A stretch of DNA of 63,857 nt, counting the filler, from Octopus bimaculoides (lineage: Eukaryota): the NCBI RefSeq assembly GCF_001194135.2. It is 6 parts of 6 records of this genome, joined end to end, with 100 filler letters (N's around TTAATTAATTAA, not from the genome) between each part and the next. Parts side by side here need not be neighbours in the genome. Positions count along the whole stretch, not along the records: positions 37,871 to 57,830 come from NC_068981.1; 5 more parts are not named here. One strand, written 5' to 3'. The notes under the pieces were generated by a model. The model saw nothing but the letters and a program-made list of their open reading frames with translations, had not been told where the DNA came from and did no database searches. Shown here piece by piece: positions 37,927-58,024 of this stretch; within the stretch, counting starts at the first letter, position 1; each line of letters opens with the position of its first letter. A program made the translations under genes and the position numbers.

Positions 37927-38109
37927 GAAATGGAGCAAAAGTACATAAAATTGAGTAATTACGCATACACTCGAATGTCTCCACAATCATATATACATTT
38001 TGATACTCATAGGACTACACATACATCTCAATGTTTACACAACAACGTGAAAATTACAGGACACACATTCACGCATATGAAAATACATGACACAAACGAG
38101 GCAAAAATG

Positions 38110-39700
38110 ACAGAAACATCTAAGGTTAACCATGACCAGCAGAATGTCATAAACGAATTAGTACCAGCAGAGAGCTACAAATACCTAGGGGTATTTAAAG
38201 GAGACAGAGTCAAACATTCAGTGATGAGGGAAAGGATCAGAAGAGAATGTTATCTCAGGGTGAGAGCAATACTCAAGACAGAGCTGAATGCAAGAAACAG
38301 GATCGAAGCGATCAATACTTTAGCCATACCAGTCGTGACTTACAGTTTCAATATCATTGACTTGTCAATTACGGAAATGTGTAATCTTGTCAGGAAAATA
38401 TGACAATTGTTGACAATGCATAGAATGCACCACCCTAAGGCAGATTTACACTGATTTTATCTGCCAAGAAAAGAGGGAGGCCGTGGACTTTTACAACTGG
38501 CATTAACAATGAAGATTGCCACAATTGGTCTAGACACCTACCTGAAAAACTCTGAGGACTGGATGTTAAAACTTGTCTCAAAACATGAAAATAAGAAAAC
38601 ATCATACTCAGTGACAAAACAGGCAAAGGAATATATAAGTGAATTCCAAATACAAATTCCAGAATTTGACGTACTATAAACAAGCAGAGAAAAAGCTAAG
38701 CGTATGAAAACCCATGCTAAAACTGCTGCCTTAGATATTCTGACTGATAAATGGCAAGAAAAACCTCTTAATCACAAATACCCAAAGAGATCTAATAATA
38801 CCGATGCTGACAAAGCCCTTGCCCATCAATGGTTAATGGCTTCAGAAACAGAAAGGTTTGTTATAGCAGCCCAAGATCAATGCTTACCTACAAGAAACTA
38901 CCAGGTCAACATATTAAAGAACGGCAATTTCCCTACATGTCGTGTATGTCAACAACAAAATGAAACCATCGATCATGTTGTCTCCATGTGCAGTCTTCTT
39001 GCACCTACAAAGTATCTCAACAGGTATGATAGAGCTGCACAATATATTCACTAGGTAATTTGCAAAAACCTGGACCTGCCCCATGATAAAAACTGGTGGG
39101 AACACAAACCACTTCTAGTGCTTGAAAATGATCACGTCTCACTCCTCTAGAACTTCACCATTCAAACTAACAGAAAGATAAATGAAAATAGGCCAGACGT
39201 CATATTGAAAGACTTCAGACAAATATCATGCTTCCTCATTGATATGACTGTCCCAATCGATATAAACGTATCTGTCAAGACCTACCAAAAACTGAGCAAG
39301 TATAAAGATCTTGAAATAGATACTGGCAAAATGTGGAACCTGAAGACTAAAACAATACCTGTTGTCATAGGAACGATAACGAAAGGGGCTCATTGCTACG
39401 TAGCTCAGATACCAGAAAACCCCAAAATGGCAGAAATTTAAAAGTTAGTGCCCATGGGAACTGCCCATATCCTATGTAAAATACTGTCTATCTAATCTCA
39501 AATTTTAAAACACACTCATAATTTTCTTATGGTTTCTTAAACATTATCTAGAACAACAATAGGTACAAAACCAAATATATGGTACCCTTGGCATAACACC
39601 TACATGAACTTCTAACTTGTTGTCTCTTGAGGTCTCTGGGTGAGACTTGGAGCCAACTTGTACAAATGCAAAGCGAAAGTCAAACATAAAGTAATAATAA
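38110..39700 (+). mobile_element. R4/Dong-type non-LTR retrotransposon, 5'-truncated, with stops
   Basis: SYKYLGV…IEAINTLAIPVVTYSF; LYLPRKEGGRGL; IAAQDQCLPTRNY; CCHC CRVCQQQNETIDHVVSMC; RYD; RPDVILKD; KLSKYKDL; 3' UTR then AAT repeats. Confidence 0.92.
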
Positions 39701-42234: not shown

Positions 42235-42327
<93 letters not shown>

Positions 42328-43941: not shown

Positions 43942-45786
43942 NNNNNNNNNNNNNNNNNNNNNNNNNNNNNNNNNNNNNNNNNNNNNNNNNNNNNNNNNNN
44001 NNNNNNNNNNNNNNNNNNNNNNNNNNNNNNNNNNNNNNNNNNNNNNNNNNNNNNNNNNNNNNNNNNNNNNNNNNNNNNNNNNNNNNNNNNNNNNNNNNNN
44101 NNNNNNNNNNNNNNNNNNNNNNNNNNNNNNNNNNNNNNNNNNNNNNNNNNNNNNNNNNNNNNNNNNNNNNNNNNNNNNNNNNNNNNNNNNNNNNNNNNNN
44201 NNNNNNNNNNNNNNNNNNNNNNNNNNNNNNNNNNNNNNNNNNNNNNNNNNNNNNNNNNNNNNNNNNNNNNNNNNNNNNNNNNNNNNNNNNNNNNNNNNNN
44301 NNNNNNNNNNNNNNNNNNNNNNNNNNNNNNNNNNNNNNNNNNNNNNNNNNNNNNNNNNNNNNNNNNNNNNNNNNNNNNNNNNNNNNNNNNNNNNNNNNNN
44401 NNNNNNNNNNNNNNNNNNNNNNNNNNNNNNNNNNNNNNNNNNNNNNNNNNNNNNNNNNNNNNNNNNNNNNNNNNNNNNNNNNNNNNNNNNNNNNNNNNNN
44501 NNNNNNNNNNNNNNNNNNNNNNNNNNNNNNNNNNNNNNNNNNNNNNNNNNNNNNNNNNNNNNNNNNNNNNNNNNNNNNNNNNNNNNNNNNNNNNNNNNNN
44601 NNNNNNNNNNNNNNNNNNNNNNNNNNNNNNNNNNNNNNNNNNNNNNNNNNNNNNNNNNNNNNNNNNNNNNNNNNNNNNNNNNNNNNNNNNNNNNNNNNNN
44701 NNNNNNNATATCAGTGGCGAATCCGGCACTGAGGCTGTTCGTGCTTTGCCCGAGTATAAATTTAGTAAAGTGAACGTGTATTTGCAAGCTGATCTAATTT
44801 CTGCCACCACTAACTTCAAGTATGTAATTTCAGCCAATAACTCGGGCTCCTTTTATTGAGCCTGGTCGCAGTTCATTTATTTTTGTTCAGCGTCTATCGG
44901 TCGTCTTACAGGTGCCCTATGTCAAAAAATATCATTCGTAGCGGACGTTCTCTCGACATCGTTCATACGCGCCTGACTCAGGCTCAGAAGTTACAGCCCG
45001 ATTTGTTATCTAGAATCGTAAAAATTAAAATAATTCAAACTCAATGTTTTCTCGAAACAATAAATTTCTATAGTGATTAAGATTTAAATTCCAATCTATG
45101 AACAGTTTCCGTTCTATAATATACTCAAAGGCTTATCCAGCAACTCGGGCTAAAACGAATGAGCCTGGTAGGCGTAAAAGACTAACTTGCATCTCTGGTC
45201 AAGAGTACAGGCGACGGTCAGATCGCTGATGTTTGTTGTGAAATCCACTGTCGTTATTTGATTACTGTTATTCTGTGTGTCTGTGTGTAAAGATCAGTTG
45301 TGTTCTGCAGGGTTGCTTTATTTTTACTCTTAACTTAGAAATGAAGAAAGACACAGTGCTAAATATAAAATATAAGCCATTTGGGGCTAGAAATATTGCG
45401 GAAAACGTGAAATTCTTCGAGCAGGCATGTGTCTTATGCGAAATCTGTGATGAGCCCGAGTGACGCTGATGACCTGGAGACATTTATGTACGTAGATGTA
45501 AATATATATATATATATATATATATANNNNNNNNNNNNNNNNNNNNNNNNNNNNNNNNNNNNNNNNNNNNNNNNNNNNNNNNNNNNNNNNNNNNNNNNNN
45601 NNNNNNNNNNNNNNNNNNNNNNNNNNNNNNNNNNNNNNNNNNNNNNNNNNNNNNNNNNNNNNNNNNNNNNNNNNNNNNNNNNNNNNNNNNNNNNNNNNNN
45701 NNNNNNNNNNNNNNNNNNNNNNNNNNNNNNNNNNNNNNNNNNNNNNNNNNNNNNNNNNNNNNNNNNNNNNNNNNNNNNNNNNNNNN

Positions 45787-45854
<68 letters not shown>

Positions 45855-50574: not shown

Positions 50575-51900
50575 ATAACATCGAGCTACAACAAGTAACC
50601 TTAGATGTCAAGAACCTTCCCAAGTATATTGTAGTTGTCCCTAATAACACTGTTTTCTGGAGCTGCACAGGTTTATGCCTATTTCCTCTATTCATCTGTT
50701 CAAACCTTTAGCCATAGTTCCTAATGCACCTATAACAACAGAGATACATTTTACCCACACTTTCCATAGCCTCTGTAATTCAATGGATGAGTCTTGATAC
50801 TTTGCTATTTTTTATACCTCTTATATTGACTTTTTCATCATTTGAGACAGTAAAGTCAATTATCTGGCACCTTTTATTATCTTTGTCTACTACTACTAAA
50901 AATCAGGCCTTCTAGCTTCTATCAATCTGTCAGTCTGAATGTTAATGTCCCACAATGTCTTACATTTCTTACTTTCTATTACTTTACTAGGTTCATATTC
51001 ATACCATTTATCAATATGGTCAAATCCTAGCTTTCTATATAACTCCCAGTGGATTAATCCCCTTGGGTTGTCATATCTTTTCTTGTACGCTTTCTGTGCC
51101 AGCATGCTACATTCACTTACTATAAGAGTATCACTTCCCTCTTTTGATTTAAATAACCTACAATGGGAATCTTCCTGATTCTTATCTATTTTGGCTTTTA
51201 TCCAATTAGTCCCCAATGCTTGATCTTGTGCTGCTACTAACAGACTTTCTGTCTCCTTTTTCAGCCTTCCTTTCTGCAACCAAAACCATGTCTCACAATT
51301 ACTATTTCCTGCAACTATCTTTGGCAATCTACCATGCTAGTCAGATAATCTTTCTTCTTTCTGGAATTTAACTTCATTTGGCTTTTTGGTTTCCCTATGT
51401 CCTACTGTTACTCTAGCAGCTCTAAATAAACTTTCTTCCCTATTACCTACATAGGAGTCTATATCTGCTCTAGCCAACCCTACACAGTCTTCTACTGATA
51501 TTAACCCTCTACCACCATTCTTTCTTGGTAAGTATAATCTTGTTAATCCTGCTCTCCGGTGAAGTCTTCTATTCATCTTGAATTTGTTCCTAGTTCTTTT
51601 TTCTAGATTTGCTAATTCAGATTTTGTCCAGTCTACAAAAGCCGATGAATAAGTAACGATACTGCCCAAGTATTCATAGCCTTCACAAGATTCGGACCAT
51701 TTAGCTTTGACTTCCTTAGCTTCATCACCCATCTGATGTACTCCATCTTAATTTTCGTTTTCATTTCTATAGTTATTACTCTGTCAGATTCTAATACTCC
51801 AAGATACTTTTAACTCTCTCCTTCTTTCAGTGATTTTAGTGTCTGGCCATTTGATAATTGGATTACTTCACCTGTCCATTTTTTATGACTAATGTTGCAC
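50575..51900 (-). mobile_element. R4/Dong-type non-LTR retrotransposon fragment
   Basis: RLYLPRKNGGRGLISVEDC; KETESLLVAAQDQALGTNW; CRLFKSKEGSDTLIVSEC; RYDN; ILWDINIQTDRLIEARRPD; QKTVLLGT. Confidence 0.9.
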
Positions 51901-53640: not shown

Positions 53641-53933
53641 AAACTGTCCGATGAACAGGAACNNNNNNNNNNNNNNNNNNNNNNNNNNNNNNNNNNNNNN
53701 NNNNNNNNNNNNNNNNNNNNNNNNNNNNNNNNNNNNNNNNNNNNNNNNNNNNNNNNNNNNNNNNNNNNNNNNNNNNNNNNNNNNNNNNNNNNNNNNNNNN
53801 NNNNNNNNNNNNNNNNNNNTATATATATATATATATATATGTTCATATATGTGTATACACACACACACACATACACAAACGTACGTACATATGTACATAT
53901 GTAAATACATGCATTCCTTATATATATTATATA

Positions 53934-54137: not shown

Positions 54138-55054
54138 TATATGATTATGCATATATGGTATGTGACTATACATGTGCAAGTACGCGTGTATACGTGTGCG
54201 TGCGCGCACGCGAGTGTGTGTGTTTAATTGTATGTATGTTTGCGTATATACGTTCTATCGAATATATTTCTCAATTTTCCCGCCAGAGGATTGAGAGCCG
54301 ATCTCTTACACGTAAACAAAGCTCTTTCAATGGAATTATGAAAAAGTAAGTGAGTAGGCCTGTATGTATGTATCTATGTATGTATGTGTGTATATGTTTA
54401 TCGATATATATATATATATATCCGTCTGGGAGCGGTAAATACGAAAGACCATCATCCTATCCCAAAAGAAGTTTTCTTTTTCATATGTAATATAGGAGAT
54501 AAGCGTTATCTCACATAGGTGTGTGCGAGTGTGTGTGTATGTGAGTGGGATGGCGGGCCGTACTTGTATAACTGCTATAAGACTCATTAGATTACCGATT
54601 TCATCAATGTGATAATATCTCACGCCATACAAAGACATCCAAGCCCCTATCAAAAGAAGCCATTTGAATGGCTGGTGATTATATAGCAGGTTTGACAGCA
54701 ACTCAAAGATAGGAATATATCGTTAAGAATATATTAAAACACTGAGACAAAGACGGAATATGAGTTTTCCACTCTCCAACACATTATTGATTTCACTACG
54801 CGTATTCTCGTTCACAATCAAAGGATATATATGTTAGGAAGGAAATTGTCCCGTTCCCATCTGTTCAACGAGCGAGAGCTGCAATAAGGCAAGTCCTATT
54901 AAGTCAACTGTGGAACTGAAAGTCGTGTCAAAGATTCAAGTCAGTGAGGAGCCTATCACTTATTGAATTGTTTAATCAATACAAATACGAAAAATATTGA
55001 TTGAACAAGTCAACAAGGGAGCATCTGTGTATTCACTTATATAGCTTTTACGTT

Positions 55055-55230
55055 TTTCTTGTTTCACTCATTTGACTGTGGCTACGCTGGGGGACCACCT
55101 TGAAAGGTTTTTGTCGAATAAATCGACCCCACCAGGACTTATTTTTTTAAAGCTGACTACCTATTCTATCGGCCTCTTGTACCGTATCGCAAAGTTACAG
55201 GGACATAAACATACCAACACCGGCTGTCAA
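55055..55230 (-). mobile_element. SINE family A, 3' half
   Basis: CTTGTTTCACTCATTTGACTGTGGCTACGCTGG…TCGACCCC…ATTCTATCGG…AAGTTACAGGGAC. Confidence 0.8.
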
Positions 55231-56189
55231 GTAGAAACATAGAACAAAGGCACACACTCACACACATAAATATATTCCTATATATATTCTCATATATATA
55301 TGCATATATATATATATANNNNNNNNNNNNNNNNNNNNNNNNNNNNNNNNNNNNNNNNNNNNNNNNNNNNNNNNNNNNNNNNNNNNNNNNNNNNNNNNNN
55401 NNNNNNNNNNNNNNNNNNNNNNNNNNNNNNNNNNNNNNNNNNNNNNNNNNNNNNNNNNNNNNNNNNNNNNNNNNNNNNNNNNNNNNNNNNNNNNNNNNNN
55501 NNNNNNNNNNNNNNNNNNNNNNNNNNNNNNNNNNNNNNNNNNNNNNNNNNNNNNNNNNNNNNNNNNNNNNNNNNNNNNNNNNNNNNNNNNNNNNNNNNNN
55601 NNNNNNNNNNNNNNNNNNNNNNNNNNNNNNNNNNNNNNNNNNNNNNNNNNNNNNNNNNNNNNNNNNNNNNNNNNNNNNNNNNNNNNNNNNNNNNNNNNNN
55701 NNNNNNNNNNNNNNNNNNNNNNNNNNNNNNNNNNNNNNNNNNNNNNNNNNNNNNNNNNNNNNNNNNNNNNNNNNNNNNNNNNNNNNNNNNNNNNNNNNNN
55801 NNNNNNNNNNNNNNNNNNNNNNNNNNNNNNNNNNNNNNNNNNNNNNNNNNNNNNNNNNNNNNNNNNNNNNNNNNNNNNNNNNNNNNNNNNNNNNNNNNGT
55901 AGTGACAGGTAGAGGCGAAGAACAGTAGAGGGAAGAATGAGAGGGGGAGATAGATATAGAGATAGAGAGAGTCGCGTTAGAAAAATAGTTAAAACTTACT
56001 GTATAAAGGTAACGCGTGCGTTCTGTCGTGATACAAACAATATATGAGTATATGCATATGTATGTACATGTATGTATATACCTTCATCTACATGTACATA
56101 TAGATACATAACTGGGTACATGAAGTGACAAAAGAACATGGACAAAATGATAAACAAGGTACAACAAACAAGCAAGCCACATAGAAACA

Positions 56190-56249
56190 TCTCCTTCATC
56201 AGCTGCCACCATTAAAACACCGGCGTTTCGAAGAATTAAGGCAGTACGC
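56190..56249 (-). ncRNA. Candidate non-circularly permuted hammerhead ribozyme
   Basis: GCGT-A-CTGCC-ttaat-TCTTC-GAAA-CGC-cggtgttttaatggt-GGCAG-CTGATGA-A-GGAGA: all three stems pair and the core residues are intact. Confidence 0.65.
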
Positions 56250-56309
56250 ATCGTTGTATTTATGTATGTATGTATTTATGTATGTGTATACATACGCGTG
56301 TGTGCATGT

Positions 56310-56465
56310 GTATGTACAACGGGCTTTTTTCAGTTTCCGTGAACCAAATCTACTCACCAAGCTTTGATCGGCCTGAGACTATAATTGAAGACACTTACCC
56401 AAGGTACTACGCAGTGGGACTGAACTCGGATGTATGTAGTTGGGAAGCAAGCTTCTTATCACACA
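56310..56465 (-). mobile_element. SINE family A, 5' half
   Basis: ACGGGCTTTTTTCAGTTTCCGT…GAAGACACTTACCCAAGGTACTACGCAGTGGGACTGAACTC…GGGAAGCAAGCTT. Confidence 0.85.
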
Positions 56466-58024
56466 ACTGAAATACCGATCAAGTTTTTTTTTTAAACTTC
56501 AACCCACTGCCTTTAAACCAGAAGTTTACATTAAGTAGCATAATTCTATAAATACTTTCTCGAAAAAATTCGATGCGATGGTCATGACGAGGACGCCTTT
56601 GATCATAGAGCTGTTAGATCAACTTTGACCTGATCTAAACAGCAACAACAACAACAAAAATGACTGCAACTAACCCTGCATTCACAGCTAACAATTGAAC
56701 TAGCCAAGGCAGCAGATTTAACTTAGAATTATACTACATAAAAAGTATAAGAAATACTGGTATTATTATTTGTTAGGCATAAGAGGTTTATATATAATAA
56801 GATAAATTACGGTAAAGTTTCATGCCACTGTCTCGAAGATTAGCCACAAAACAAAAGCTAACGAAAAAATACCAACAAAAACAGTATTTTAGCAAACTAG
56901 CGTCATGAAAAAGAACATGCGGAAAGCAATGCGTATGTGTGTACATTTATGATATATATGTGTGTGCGCGCGCGTGTGTGTGCGCGCGCGTGTGTGTGCG
57001 TGCATGTGTGTGTGTGTGTGTGTGTGGATATAGGTAGAGAGATAGATAGATACTCACATGCAAGTATGTGTTCGCTTTGTATGCGTTTGTGTGTGTGCGC
57101 GTGTGTGTATGCGTGAGTGTGTATTCGTGTAAATAGGTACAAATATCTTGCGGCGTATGAATCTGTCAAGGGAGATAACTAGCCAAAGAGAAGTAACCCT
57201 CTATAGAAACGTAGCTACATTAAACCATTCTATAAATAGGCATCGATAAAAGTTAATAGTAGATTACATATTATGGTTCGACTATAATTGTCTACAATCC
57301 TTCAAAGTAGTTCTACATGTAGATGCAGACTACAATCAGCGAAGGGAAAAAAAGAATTCGAAGACGTATTAAATAGCAGTATGCCTAGTTTTCTGAAGTA
57401 TGAAACAAAGGTGGAGCTCAGAAGTTTCAAGTCTGATACGTGTAGACAGAACAATGTAGCAAATATTCTGTCAACTGATAGAAACATTATTAATTTTCAC
57501 AGTAATATATGAAAAAAAATATAACGCATCCAACAGTTATAAAATAAAATGTAGAAATAGTATTGCATTGACACAAGATATAAAGTACAAGTTTCTTACG
57601 ATTTAGCGAAGTCATACGAAACCATTTACGAAACCATTAACAATAGTTCGTCGGTTATTACAAAATGGTTGTAAAAGTTTTTGCAAAGTTTATTGGTCGG
57701 GAGCAAATCTTACACACTAGATAACACAACATAGATACAAACACTCATGTGTATGAGCATGTTGTGTGTTTATATGCATACAATCATACACAAACACACA
57801 CACACAGATATATATATATATATATATATANNNNNNNNNNNNNNNNNNNNNNNNNNNNNNNNNNNNNNNNNNNNTTAATTAATTAANNNNNNNNNNNNNN
57901 NNNNNNNNNNNNNNNNNNNNNNNNNNNNNNCGATTGTAAGCTCGATGCTCTAACCACTGAGCCATGCACCTTCACATATAGTTACTATATACACCTTCTA
58001 ATTACAATATACGTCTGAGAATTA

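What the first reader, a model, noticed from the sequence alone, without database searches (positions are those of the whole stretch)
56190..56249. Hammerhead ribozyme with strands in non-circularly permuted (3-2-1) order
Seen on the minus strand, 5' to 3': [III' GCGT, A17, I' CTGCC]-5 nt-[II' TCTTC, GAAA, III CGC]-15 nt-[I GGCAG, CTGATGA, A, II GGAGA]. Stem I has 5 perfect pairs, stem II 5 pairs (one GU), stem III 4 pairs. C3-A9, G12-A14, A15.1-U16.1 and the GUA site are all canonical, plus one extra A after A9 as in Penelope-type variants. Known: types I-III are the circular orders 1-2-3, 2-3-1 and 3-1-2; 3-2-1 needs a pseudoknotted fold. Non-circular hammerhead permutations have been reported but are rare, and standard covariance models miss them. 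The short linker joins the tips of stems I and II, which lie side by side in the active fold, so the topology is plausible. The motif follows the 5' half of a SINE A copy on the same strand, so a Pol III transcript could carry it. Predicted cleavage is between 56245 and 56244.
Basis: partly seen in the sequence, partly recalled or inferred. Interest (0 to 1): 0.9.

Follow-up and report, generated by a model that had tools for sequence, protein, structure and literature searches.

The report
Lone rearranged hammerhead-like motif, probably fortuitous
A 60-base stretch next to an old SINE copy carries every core element of a hammerhead self-cleaving RNA in the rare, already published "S-G-C" order. 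It is a single copy with no relatives I could reach, and it lacks the extra helix that known examples need, so it is most likely a chance match rather than a working ribozyme.

Summary
On the minus strand, 56249..56190 reads GCGU-A17-CUGCC / 5 nt / UCUUC-GAAA-CGC / 15 nt / GGCAG-CUGAUGA-A-GGAGA, with 5, 5 and 4 base pairs and one G·U. The order is not new: it is the "type SGC" hammerhead of Eckert et al. 2023 (PMC10085705). Validated type-SGC ribozymes also have a 5-bp stem II, a 5-bp or longer stem I, a short stem I–II linker and one extra base after A9.

The three helices sum to -12.9 kcal/mol, as stable as in validated SGC-1 and SGC-3. In simulated sequence, equal-or-better matches in any of the six block orders occur about 1e-4 to 1.4e-3 times per 58-kb window. 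That is about 5–60 per 2.7-Gb genome (a size I assumed).

Against a real ribozyme:
- No second copy exists in the piece or in any collection I could search, so covariation cannot be tested.
- The published search of all RefSeq found none in genomes of known organisms.
- A TTTT run sits between blocks G and C.
- Competing folds are at least as stable.

Verdict: most likely a fortuitous match (about 0.8). A real ribozyme is about 0.06.

The parts
56240..56249 (-). Block S: stem III 3' strand GCGU (56249-56246), N17 = A (56245, predicted cleavage 3' of it), stem I strand CUGCC (56244-56240)
   Evidence: sequence and descriptor script
56235..56239 (-). S-G linker UUAAU (5 nt). It joins the distal ends of stems I and II.
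   Evidence: Published type-SGC linkers in the alignment read are 2-4 nt and 'typically three'
56223..56234 (-). Block G: stem II strand UCUUC (56234-56230), G12A13A14A15.1 (56229-56226), stem III strand CGC (56225-56223)
56208..56222 (-). G-C linker CGGUGUUUUAAUGGU (15 nt). It contains TTTT at 56217-56214, a minimal Pol III terminator. It should supply the 5' strand of the fourth helix but does not.
   Evidence: best duplex with the 3' flank is -2.6 kcal/mol; 68% of shuffles do as well; T-run
56190..56207 (-). Block C: stem I strand GGCAG (56207-56203), C3-A9 CUGAUGA (56202-56196), extra A (56195), stem II strand GGAGA (56194-56190)
56311..56465 (-). Context: decayed 5' half of a SINE-like repeat, 84.5% identical to a consensus I recalled from memory as an abundant Octopus SINE
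   Evidence: The consensus is from memory, not from a database
56251..56310 (-). Context: (ACAU/TGTA)n-type microsatellite tail between the SINE half and the motif
   Evidence: Tandem Repeats Finder, 56255-56285, period 4; sub-threshold mir-297/466-like hits here are low-complexity artefacts
56045..56122 (-). Context: second AT/TG-rich low-complexity stretch. It bounds the roughly 128-nt unique unit (56250-56123) that holds the motif.
55053..55231 (-). Context: 3' half of the same SINE family on the same strand, beyond the assembly gap 55319-55898. It is not similar to the motif unit.
   Evidence: 76.5% identity to the recalled consensus; unit versus this copy: p = 0.22

Best explanation
This is a fortuitous match. 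Unique, non-coding, AT-rich DNA lies between microsatellites, downstream of a decayed SINE half in an invertebrate genome (cephalopod-like by my recollection of the SINE). It happens to carry CUGAUGA, GAAA and a UA site with complementary flanks in the S-G-C order. It has not been selected as a ribozyme and has no biological cleavage function. The three core helices are as good as in validated type-SGC hammerheads, so a synthetic transcript might cleave slowly at high Mg2+. Without the helix that bridges stems I and II, I expect little or no activity.

Shown: the anatomy, the chance rates, the missing fourth helix, and the absence of copies in what I could search. Inferred: that it is not selected, and that it cleaves poorly.
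For: 1. It is a single copy. There is no second copy of the motif or of its 128-nt unit in the 18 kb of real sequence. The 55-aa ORF that spans it has no homologue and no exact record. A motif-specific pattern is absent from the metagenome, viral and prokaryote genome collections.

2. The fourth helix is missing. All the published HRIMA-1 alignment rows I read carry it, and disrupting it abolished cleavage in SGC-3. Here the best duplex is -2.6 kcal/mol, and 68% of shuffles do as well. The same measure gives -14.6 for SGC-1 and -8.3 for SGC-3.

3. Chance rates are not negligible. Equal-or-better matches occur at 0.8e-9 to 1.2e-8 per strand-nucleotide. That is 5-60 per 2.7-Gb genome.

4. Eckert et al. 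searched all RefSeq with type-SGC descriptors. They expected false positives and kept only hits with covariation. [quoted passage not shown]

5. Stem II (-2.7) and stem III (-3.4 kcal/mol) are weak. Competing nested folds of -11 to -22 kcal/mol use the strands of blocks S and C.

6. The first T4 run on this strand after the SINE head lies between blocks G and C.

7. No Rfam family, hammerhead or otherwise, reaches threshold in the piece. No hammerhead model matches even at E <= 10 in the 700 nt around the motif.
Against: The match is of high quality.
- It ranks in roughly the top 0.03% of chance hits by helix energy (1 of 3465 hits at the loose threshold in 1.2e9 nt).
- The per-window expectation is only 1e-4 to 1.4e-3.
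- Every core position is canonical.
- Its summed helix energy (-12.9) is comparable with validated SGC-1 (-14.1) and SGC-3 (-12.2).
- Its 5-bp stems, short I-II linker and one-base insertion after A9 resemble the published family.

The absence of relatives is weak evidence. None of the searchable collections appears to hold this genome: the SINE itself found nothing in them.
Confidence: 0.8

Rival explanations
1. It is a genuine, selected type-SGC hammerhead ribozyme encoded in an animal genome. It would be carried on a transcript that starts in or reads through the neighbouring SINE, and it would cleave 3' of A56245. The three mutually crossing helices assemble the normal hammerhead core. The 5-nt linker holds stems I and II side by side in place of the usual fourth helix.
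For: All core positions are canonical, and the helices are as stable as in validated SGC ribozymes. The block order, 5-bp stems I and II, short linker and insertion after A9 match the published architecture. The per-window chance expectation is 1e-4 to 1.4e-3. From established knowledge, repeat-borne hammerheads exist in animals (Schistosoma Sm-alpha, newt satellite 2, retrozymes, Penelope-like elements).
Against: There is no fourth helix. No copies or homologues could be reached. A TTTT run between blocks G and C would tend to end a Pol III transcript before block C. The published RefSeq-wide search found none in genomes of known organisms. The motif unit is not part of the SINE as I recall it, nor of the other SINE copy in the piece. 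Competing folds are stable.
Confidence: 0.06
2. It is an accidental but catalytically competent hammerhead. It is not selected and has no role, yet a transcript of 56262-56170 (minus strand) would self-cleave measurably in vitro. The lone GCS-1 sequence of Caballeronia peredens behaved this way.
For: GCS-1 is a single pattern match without covariation, and it cleaved at 0.014 per min. The core here is intact, and the helix energies match active examples. The topology has been validated experimentally for this block order.
Against: Mutant M8 of SGC-3, which disrupts only the stem I/II bridging helix, showed barely visible cleavage if any. That helix is absent here. A competing helix, CUGCC·GGUGG plus UUAA/UUAA, can form before block C is transcribed.
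Confidence: 0.12
3. It is a rearranged relic of a canonical hammerhead-bearing repeat (retrozyme, satellite or Penelope-like element). Deletions would have brought blocks from neighbouring tandem copies into S-G-C order.
For: Fragments of non-LTR retroelements are common in the piece. Tandem hammerhead repeats are known in animals (established knowledge).
Against: No other hammerhead-like site exists in the piece, even at stems of 3, 3 and 3 pairs, and no Rfam hammerhead hit. The spacers of 5 and 15 nt leave no trace of skipped blocks. There is no repeat structure around the unit.
Confidence: 0.02

Closest known systems
Type-SGC hammerhead ribozymes (HRIMA-1 motif and type-SGC variants; Eckert, Friedrich, Weinberg & Weinberg, NAR 2023, PMC10085705)
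   Same: The block order is the same: S (stem III strand, cleavage site, stem I strand), then G (stem II strand, GAAA, stem III strand), then C (stem I strand, CUGAnGA, stem II strand). The three helices cross one another. Stems I and II are 5 bp, as in HRIMA-1. A short linker joins stems I and II. One extra base follows A9. The summed helix energy is comparable.
   Different: There is no helix bridging stems I and II. The linker is 5 nt rather than 2-4. The extra base is A rather than U. Stem I is CUGCC/GGCAG, not the invariant AUGUU/AACAU of HRIMA-1. It lies in animal-like genomic DNA beside a SINE. The published examples come almost only from metatranscriptomes of presumed circular RNA agents with hairpin ribozymes. 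It is a single sequence, so no covariation is available.
GCS-1, the lone type-GCS candidate of Caballeronia peredens (same paper)
   Same: It is a single pattern match to a non-circular hammerhead permutation in the genome of a known organism. It has no covariation support and no obvious biological rationale.
   Different: GCS-1 was tested and cleaves slowly, at 0.014 per min. This candidate is untested. The block order differs (GCS versus SGC), and GCS-1 is bacterial.
Repeat-borne canonical hammerheads of animals (Schistosoma Sm-alpha SINE-like element, newt satellite 2, metazoan retrozymes, Penelope-like elements). Named from established knowledge, not tested here.
   Same: A hammerhead core sits next to or within short interspersed or tandem repeats in an invertebrate genome.
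   Different: Those ribozymes are type I or type III (circular orders). They are part of the repeat consensus, are present in many copies, and are detected by Rfam models. Here the order is S-G-C, the unit is single copy in the piece, it is not part of the SINE, and no Rfam hammerhead model matches.

Membership tests
Hammerhead ribozyme (catalytic core) | C3 U4 G5 A6 N7 G8 A9 box next to stems I and II | tested here: met
   CUGAUGA at 56202-56196 (minus strand), flanked by GGCAG and, after one extra A, GGAGA
Hammerhead ribozyme (catalytic core) | G12 A13 A14, an A15.1-U16.1 pair, and N17 other than G at the cleavage site | tested here: met
   GAAA at 56229-56226, U16.1 at 56246, A17 at 56245. 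The C15.2-G16.2 and G10.1-C11.1 pairs are also present
Hammerhead ribozyme (catalytic core) | Three helices I, II and III closing the core | tested here: met
   5, 5 and 4 contiguous pairs with one G·U. Isolated duplex energies are -6.8, -2.7 and -3.4 kcal/mol
Hammerhead ribozyme (catalytic core) | Site-specific, Mg2+-dependent self-cleavage that is abolished by core mutations | not testable with these tools
   This needs in vitro transcription and cleavage assays
Hammerhead ribozyme (catalytic core) | Conservation of the core and covariation in the stems among homologues | tested here: inconclusive
   No homologue was found in the piece or in any accessible collection. Those collections do not seem to hold this genome, since the SINE itself found nothing
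Hammerhead ribozyme (Rfam covariance models) | A match to an Rfam hammerhead model | tested here: not met
   No hit at gathering score in the piece, and none at E <= 10 in 55900-56600. This is expected for a non-circular order, so it says little either way
Type-SGC hammerhead (Eckert et al. 2023) | Block order S-G-C, with a short linker running from stem I directly to stem II | tested here: met
   Order SGC with linkers of 5 nt and 15 nt. Published linkers are 'typically three nucleotides' and '0-44 nt'
Type-SGC hammerhead (Eckert et al. 2023) | A helix joining the other sides of stems I and II (fourth helix), required for cleavage in SGC-3 | tested here: not met
   The best duplex between the 15-nt linker and the 3' flank is -2.6 kcal/mol, no better than 68% of shuffles. 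SGC-1 gives -14.6 and SGC-3 gives -8.3. The requirement is shown
Type-SGC hammerhead, HRIMA-1 motif | Invariant stem I AUGUU/AACAU and the conserved U after A9 | tested here: not met
   Stem I here is CUGCC/GGCAG, and the inserted base is A (one search compared with the alignment)
Type-SGC hammerhead (Eckert et al. 2023) | Occurrence in metatranscriptome contigs of presumed circular RNAs, often opposite a hairpin ribozyme | tested here: not met
   The context is scaffolded genomic DNA with assembly gaps, retroelement fragments, a SINE and microsatellites. There are no ribozyme hits nearby
SINE- or repeat-borne hammerhead | The motif is part of the repeat unit and recurs with it | tested here: not met
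   The unit 56262-56123 is not similar to the SINE 3' half in the piece (p = 0.22) or to the recalled consensus (score at shuffle level). It has no second copy in the piece. Whole-genome recurrence could not be tested

The most novel reading that the evidence does not exclude
The motif is a functional type-SGC hammerhead encoded in the DNA of an animal. That would be the first non-circularly permuted ribozyme in a eukaryotic genome. It would be a minimal form that works without the stem I/II bridging helix, possibly tied to SINE-derived transcripts.
Probability: 0.06. Interest if true: 0.75.

Novelty: not a real feature. Interest (0 to 1): 0.27.

Why it matters
If it were real, non-circular RNA permutations would extend from uncultured RNA agents to animal genomes. 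It would also show that the S-G-C hammerhead can do without its fourth helix. That bears on how easily ribozymes arise by rearrangement or convergence.

As it stands, the finding is mainly a calibration point. A hammerhead pattern with canonical core positions and helices as stable as in validated ribozymes is expected about 5-60 times by chance in a genome of a few gigabases. This is why the authors of the published class accepted only hits with covariation. The two checks that would settle it are cheap: a search of the source genome and one transcription assay.

Tried and rejected
- **Rfam.** I scanned the piece at gathering score and ran a permissive scan around the motif. There were no hammerhead hits. 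The mir-297, mir-466 and mir-1277 sub-threshold hits are microsatellite artefacts.
- **Copies within the piece.** BLAST of the motif, its flanks and the SINE against the piece found only low-complexity matches.
- **ORFs as handles to fetch paralogues.** Two ORFs overlapping the motif, of 55 and 67 aa, have no exact record. The homologue search found nothing with the 55-aa ORF that spans the motif, and nothing with the ORF antisense to the SINE.
- **Host contamination in metagenomes.** A scan with a SINE pattern returned 0.
- **A retroelement ORF as a handle to DNA of the same species.** The homologues are only about 55% identical. The fetched ENA contig L001 has no copy of the SINE, so it comes from a different organism.
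- **Motif-specific pattern.** It returned 0 in the metagenome, viral and prokaryote genome collections.
- **Is the motif unit a diverged SINE 3' half?** Rejected. The alignment score is at shuffle level.
- **Pair probabilities in the nested ensemble as a test of the fold.** Rejected as uninformative. The validated SGC-1 also scores near 0 for stems I-III, because the helices cross.
- **tRNA-like head of the SINE.** ARAGORN found nothing.
- **Literature.** A search for the SINE sequence found only an unrelated paper, and a search for hammerheads in Octopus found nothing bearing on this motif. No paper other than Eckert et al. uses the term 'type-SGC'.
- **Covariance model from the HRIMA-1 alignment.** I did not build one. 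The invariant stem I and the fourth helix already exclude membership by inspection.

Full report
**1. Observation.**
One search read the minus strand. 56249..56190 is GCGUACUGCC UUAAU UCUUCGAAACGC CGGUGUUUUAAUGGU GGCAGCUGAUGAAGGAGA. I wrote a descriptor script that looks for three things:
- CUGAnGA, with 0 or 1 inserted base after it;
- GAAA;
- a U followed by a base other than G, with contiguous pairing for stems I, II and III.
It allows any of the six block orders. It finds this site and nothing else in the 19,960-nt piece on either strand, even with stems of only 3, 3 and 3 pairs.

Stem I is CUGCC/GGCAG (5 Watson-Crick pairs). Stem II is GGAGA/UCUUC (5 pairs, one G·U, starting with G10.1-C11.1). 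Stem III is ACGC/GCGU (4 pairs, starting with A15.1-U16.1 and C15.2-G16.2). N17 is A at 56245. One extra A follows A9.

**2. What the arrangement is.**
Eckert et al. 2023 (PMC10085705) divide the hammerhead into blocks C (CUGAnGA), G (GAAA) and S (cleavage site). Types I, II and III are CGS, GSC and SCG. The authors found and validated a non-circular order, type SGC, with 583 predicted sequences. [quoted passage not shown] The candidate has exactly the S-G-C order, so this order is a published class and not a new topology.

I rebuilt SGC-1 and SGC-3 from the oligonucleotides in the supplement and read the HRIMA-1 alignment. HRIMA-1 rows have a 5-bp stem I, a 5-bp stem II, a 2-4-nt linker and, almost always, one extra base (U) after A9. 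My descriptor recovers SGC-1, SGC-3 and CSG-1. Their summed helix energies are -14.1, -12.2 and -17.3 kcal/mol. The candidate's is -12.9. In its three core helices and its core bases, the candidate is as good as ribozymes that work.

**3. What is missing.**
Every published type-SGC alignment row I read has a fourth helix. It forms between the sequence just 5' of the block-C stem I strand and the sequence just 3' of the block-C stem II strand. Disrupting it in SGC-3 (mutant M8) left cleavage 'barely visible, if at all', and compensatory changes restored it.

In the candidate, the best duplex between the 15-nt G-C linker and the 20-30 nt after block C is -2.6 kcal/mol. It is rich in G·U pairs, and 68% of shuffled pairs do as well. 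The same calculation gives -14.6 for SGC-1 and -8.3 for SGC-3. Stem I also differs from the invariant AUGUU/AACAU of HRIMA-1. The candidate is therefore not a member of that motif, and at best a helix-IV-less variant.

**4. Folding.**
[quoted passage not shown] Nested competitors are at least as stable.
- In the 60-mer (-11.0 kcal/mol), CUGCC pairs with GGUGG and the two UUAA linker segments pair with each other. This helix can form before GGCAG is transcribed.
- With flanks added (-14.5 to -22.2 kcal/mol), block S pairs with the 3' part of block C and the sequence after it.
Pair probabilities from the nested ensemble cannot judge a fold whose helices cross. The validated SGC-1 also scores near 0 for stems I-III, so I draw no conclusion from them.

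**5. Chance.**
I scanned simulated sequence with the same descriptor, allowing any of the six orders and a span of up to 150 nt.

By pair counts (stems of at least 5, 5 and 4 pairs), an order-3 Markov model of the piece gives 70 hits in 4e8 strand-nucleotides. That is 0.006 per piece, 0.02 per 57.9-kb window, and about 950 per 2.7-Gb genome. Most of these hits have 4-5 G·U pairs.

Ranked by summed helix energy (<= -12.9 kcal/mol), the counts are:

| Null model | Hits | Strand-nt scanned |
|---|---|---|
| Order-3 Markov, 36.6% GC | 1 | 1.2e9 |
| iid, 45% GC | 1 | 6e8 |
| iid, 50% GC | 7 | 6e8 |

A hand calculation from motif frequencies gives about 6e-9 per strand-nucleotide, which agrees.

The expectation is therefore 1e-4 to 1.4e-3 per window and about 5-60 per 2.7-Gb genome (a genome size I assumed). 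The match is much better than a typical chance hit. Even so, a handful to a few dozen equally good ones should exist in such a genome without any selection. I do not know how many windows the first stage read.

**6. Relatives.**
I found none. There is no second copy in the piece. ORFs overlapping the motif have no exact record, and the 55-aa ORF that spans it has no homologue. A motif-specific pattern is absent from the metagenome, viral and prokaryote genome collections.

This is weak evidence, because the collections do not seem to contain this genome. The neighbouring SINE found nothing either. The closest retroelement proteins are about 55% identical, from an ENA contig that lacks the SINE. 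Covariation, which was the criterion used by the authors of the class, could not be tested.

Those authors searched all RefSeq. [quoted passage not shown] GCS-1 nevertheless cleaved slowly in vitro.

**7. Context.**
The piece is scaffolded eukaryotic DNA. It has four N gaps, fragments of non-LTR retroelements and many microsatellites.

On the minus strand, 56465-56311 is 84.5% identical to the 5' half of a repeat that I recall from memory as an abundant Octopus SINE. The 3' half of the same repeat lies at 55231-55053, beyond the gap 55319-55898. This consensus is from memory and not from a database. The strong alignment shows only that the window carries that repeat.

The motif lies in a roughly 128-nt unique unit (56250-56123), between a (TGTA)n tail and another low-complexity stretch. 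This unit is not similar to the SINE 3' half (p = 0.22).

**8. Verdict.**
The anatomy and the feasibility of the topology are right, and they match a published, validated class. That it is a ribozyme in any biological sense is unsupported.

Five things point to a fortuitous match (about 0.8):
- the missing fourth helix;
- the single-copy status;
- the internal T4 run;
- the stable competing folds;
- the published negative result for genomes of known organisms.

I put an accidental but in vitro-active hammerhead at about 0.12, and a selected animal type-SGC ribozyme at about 0.06. A search of the source genome and one transcription assay would settle it.

Noticed in passing
window 56311-56465 (-) and 55053-55231 (-): The two halves of one SINE-like repeat family lie on the same strand about 1.1 kb apart, separated by the motif unit, microsatellites and a 580-N assembly gap. 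They may be one disrupted or mis-scaffolded element, or two separate copies. The family assignment (abundant Octopus SINE) rests on my memory of the consensus.
   Followed up: partly
window 43942-44707, 45527-45786, 53663-53819, 55319-55898: There are four runs of N (assembly gaps). Each is bordered by TA, TG, CA or TATC-type microsatellites, so the scaffold breaks at simple repeats.
   Followed up: no
window 37930-39054 (+) and 50896-51732 (-): ORF fragments of non-LTR retrotransposon reverse transcriptase. One has a weak zf-RVT Pfam hit. The 50896-51327 ORF has homologues of about 55% identity on long ENA contigs (ERZ25073825) from a different organism.
   Followed up: partly
window 56045-56122 and 56251-56326: Sub-threshold Rfam hits to mir-297, mir-466 and mir-1277 (E down to 1e-5, scores far below gathering) fall on (TGTA/TATG)n low-complexity DNA. 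They are composition artefacts, not miRNA genes.
   Followed up: yes
window 56084-56251 (-): A 55-codon ATG-to-stop ORF runs through the whole motif (MRTALILRNAGVLMVAADEGDV...). It has no homologue and no exact record in the protein collections, so it is probably a chance ORF.
   Followed up: yes
window 42237-42325 and 45787-45851: Long (TG/CA)n microsatellites produce the 'HTHTHT' and 'CVCVCV' pseudo-ORFs in the ORF list.
   Followed up: no
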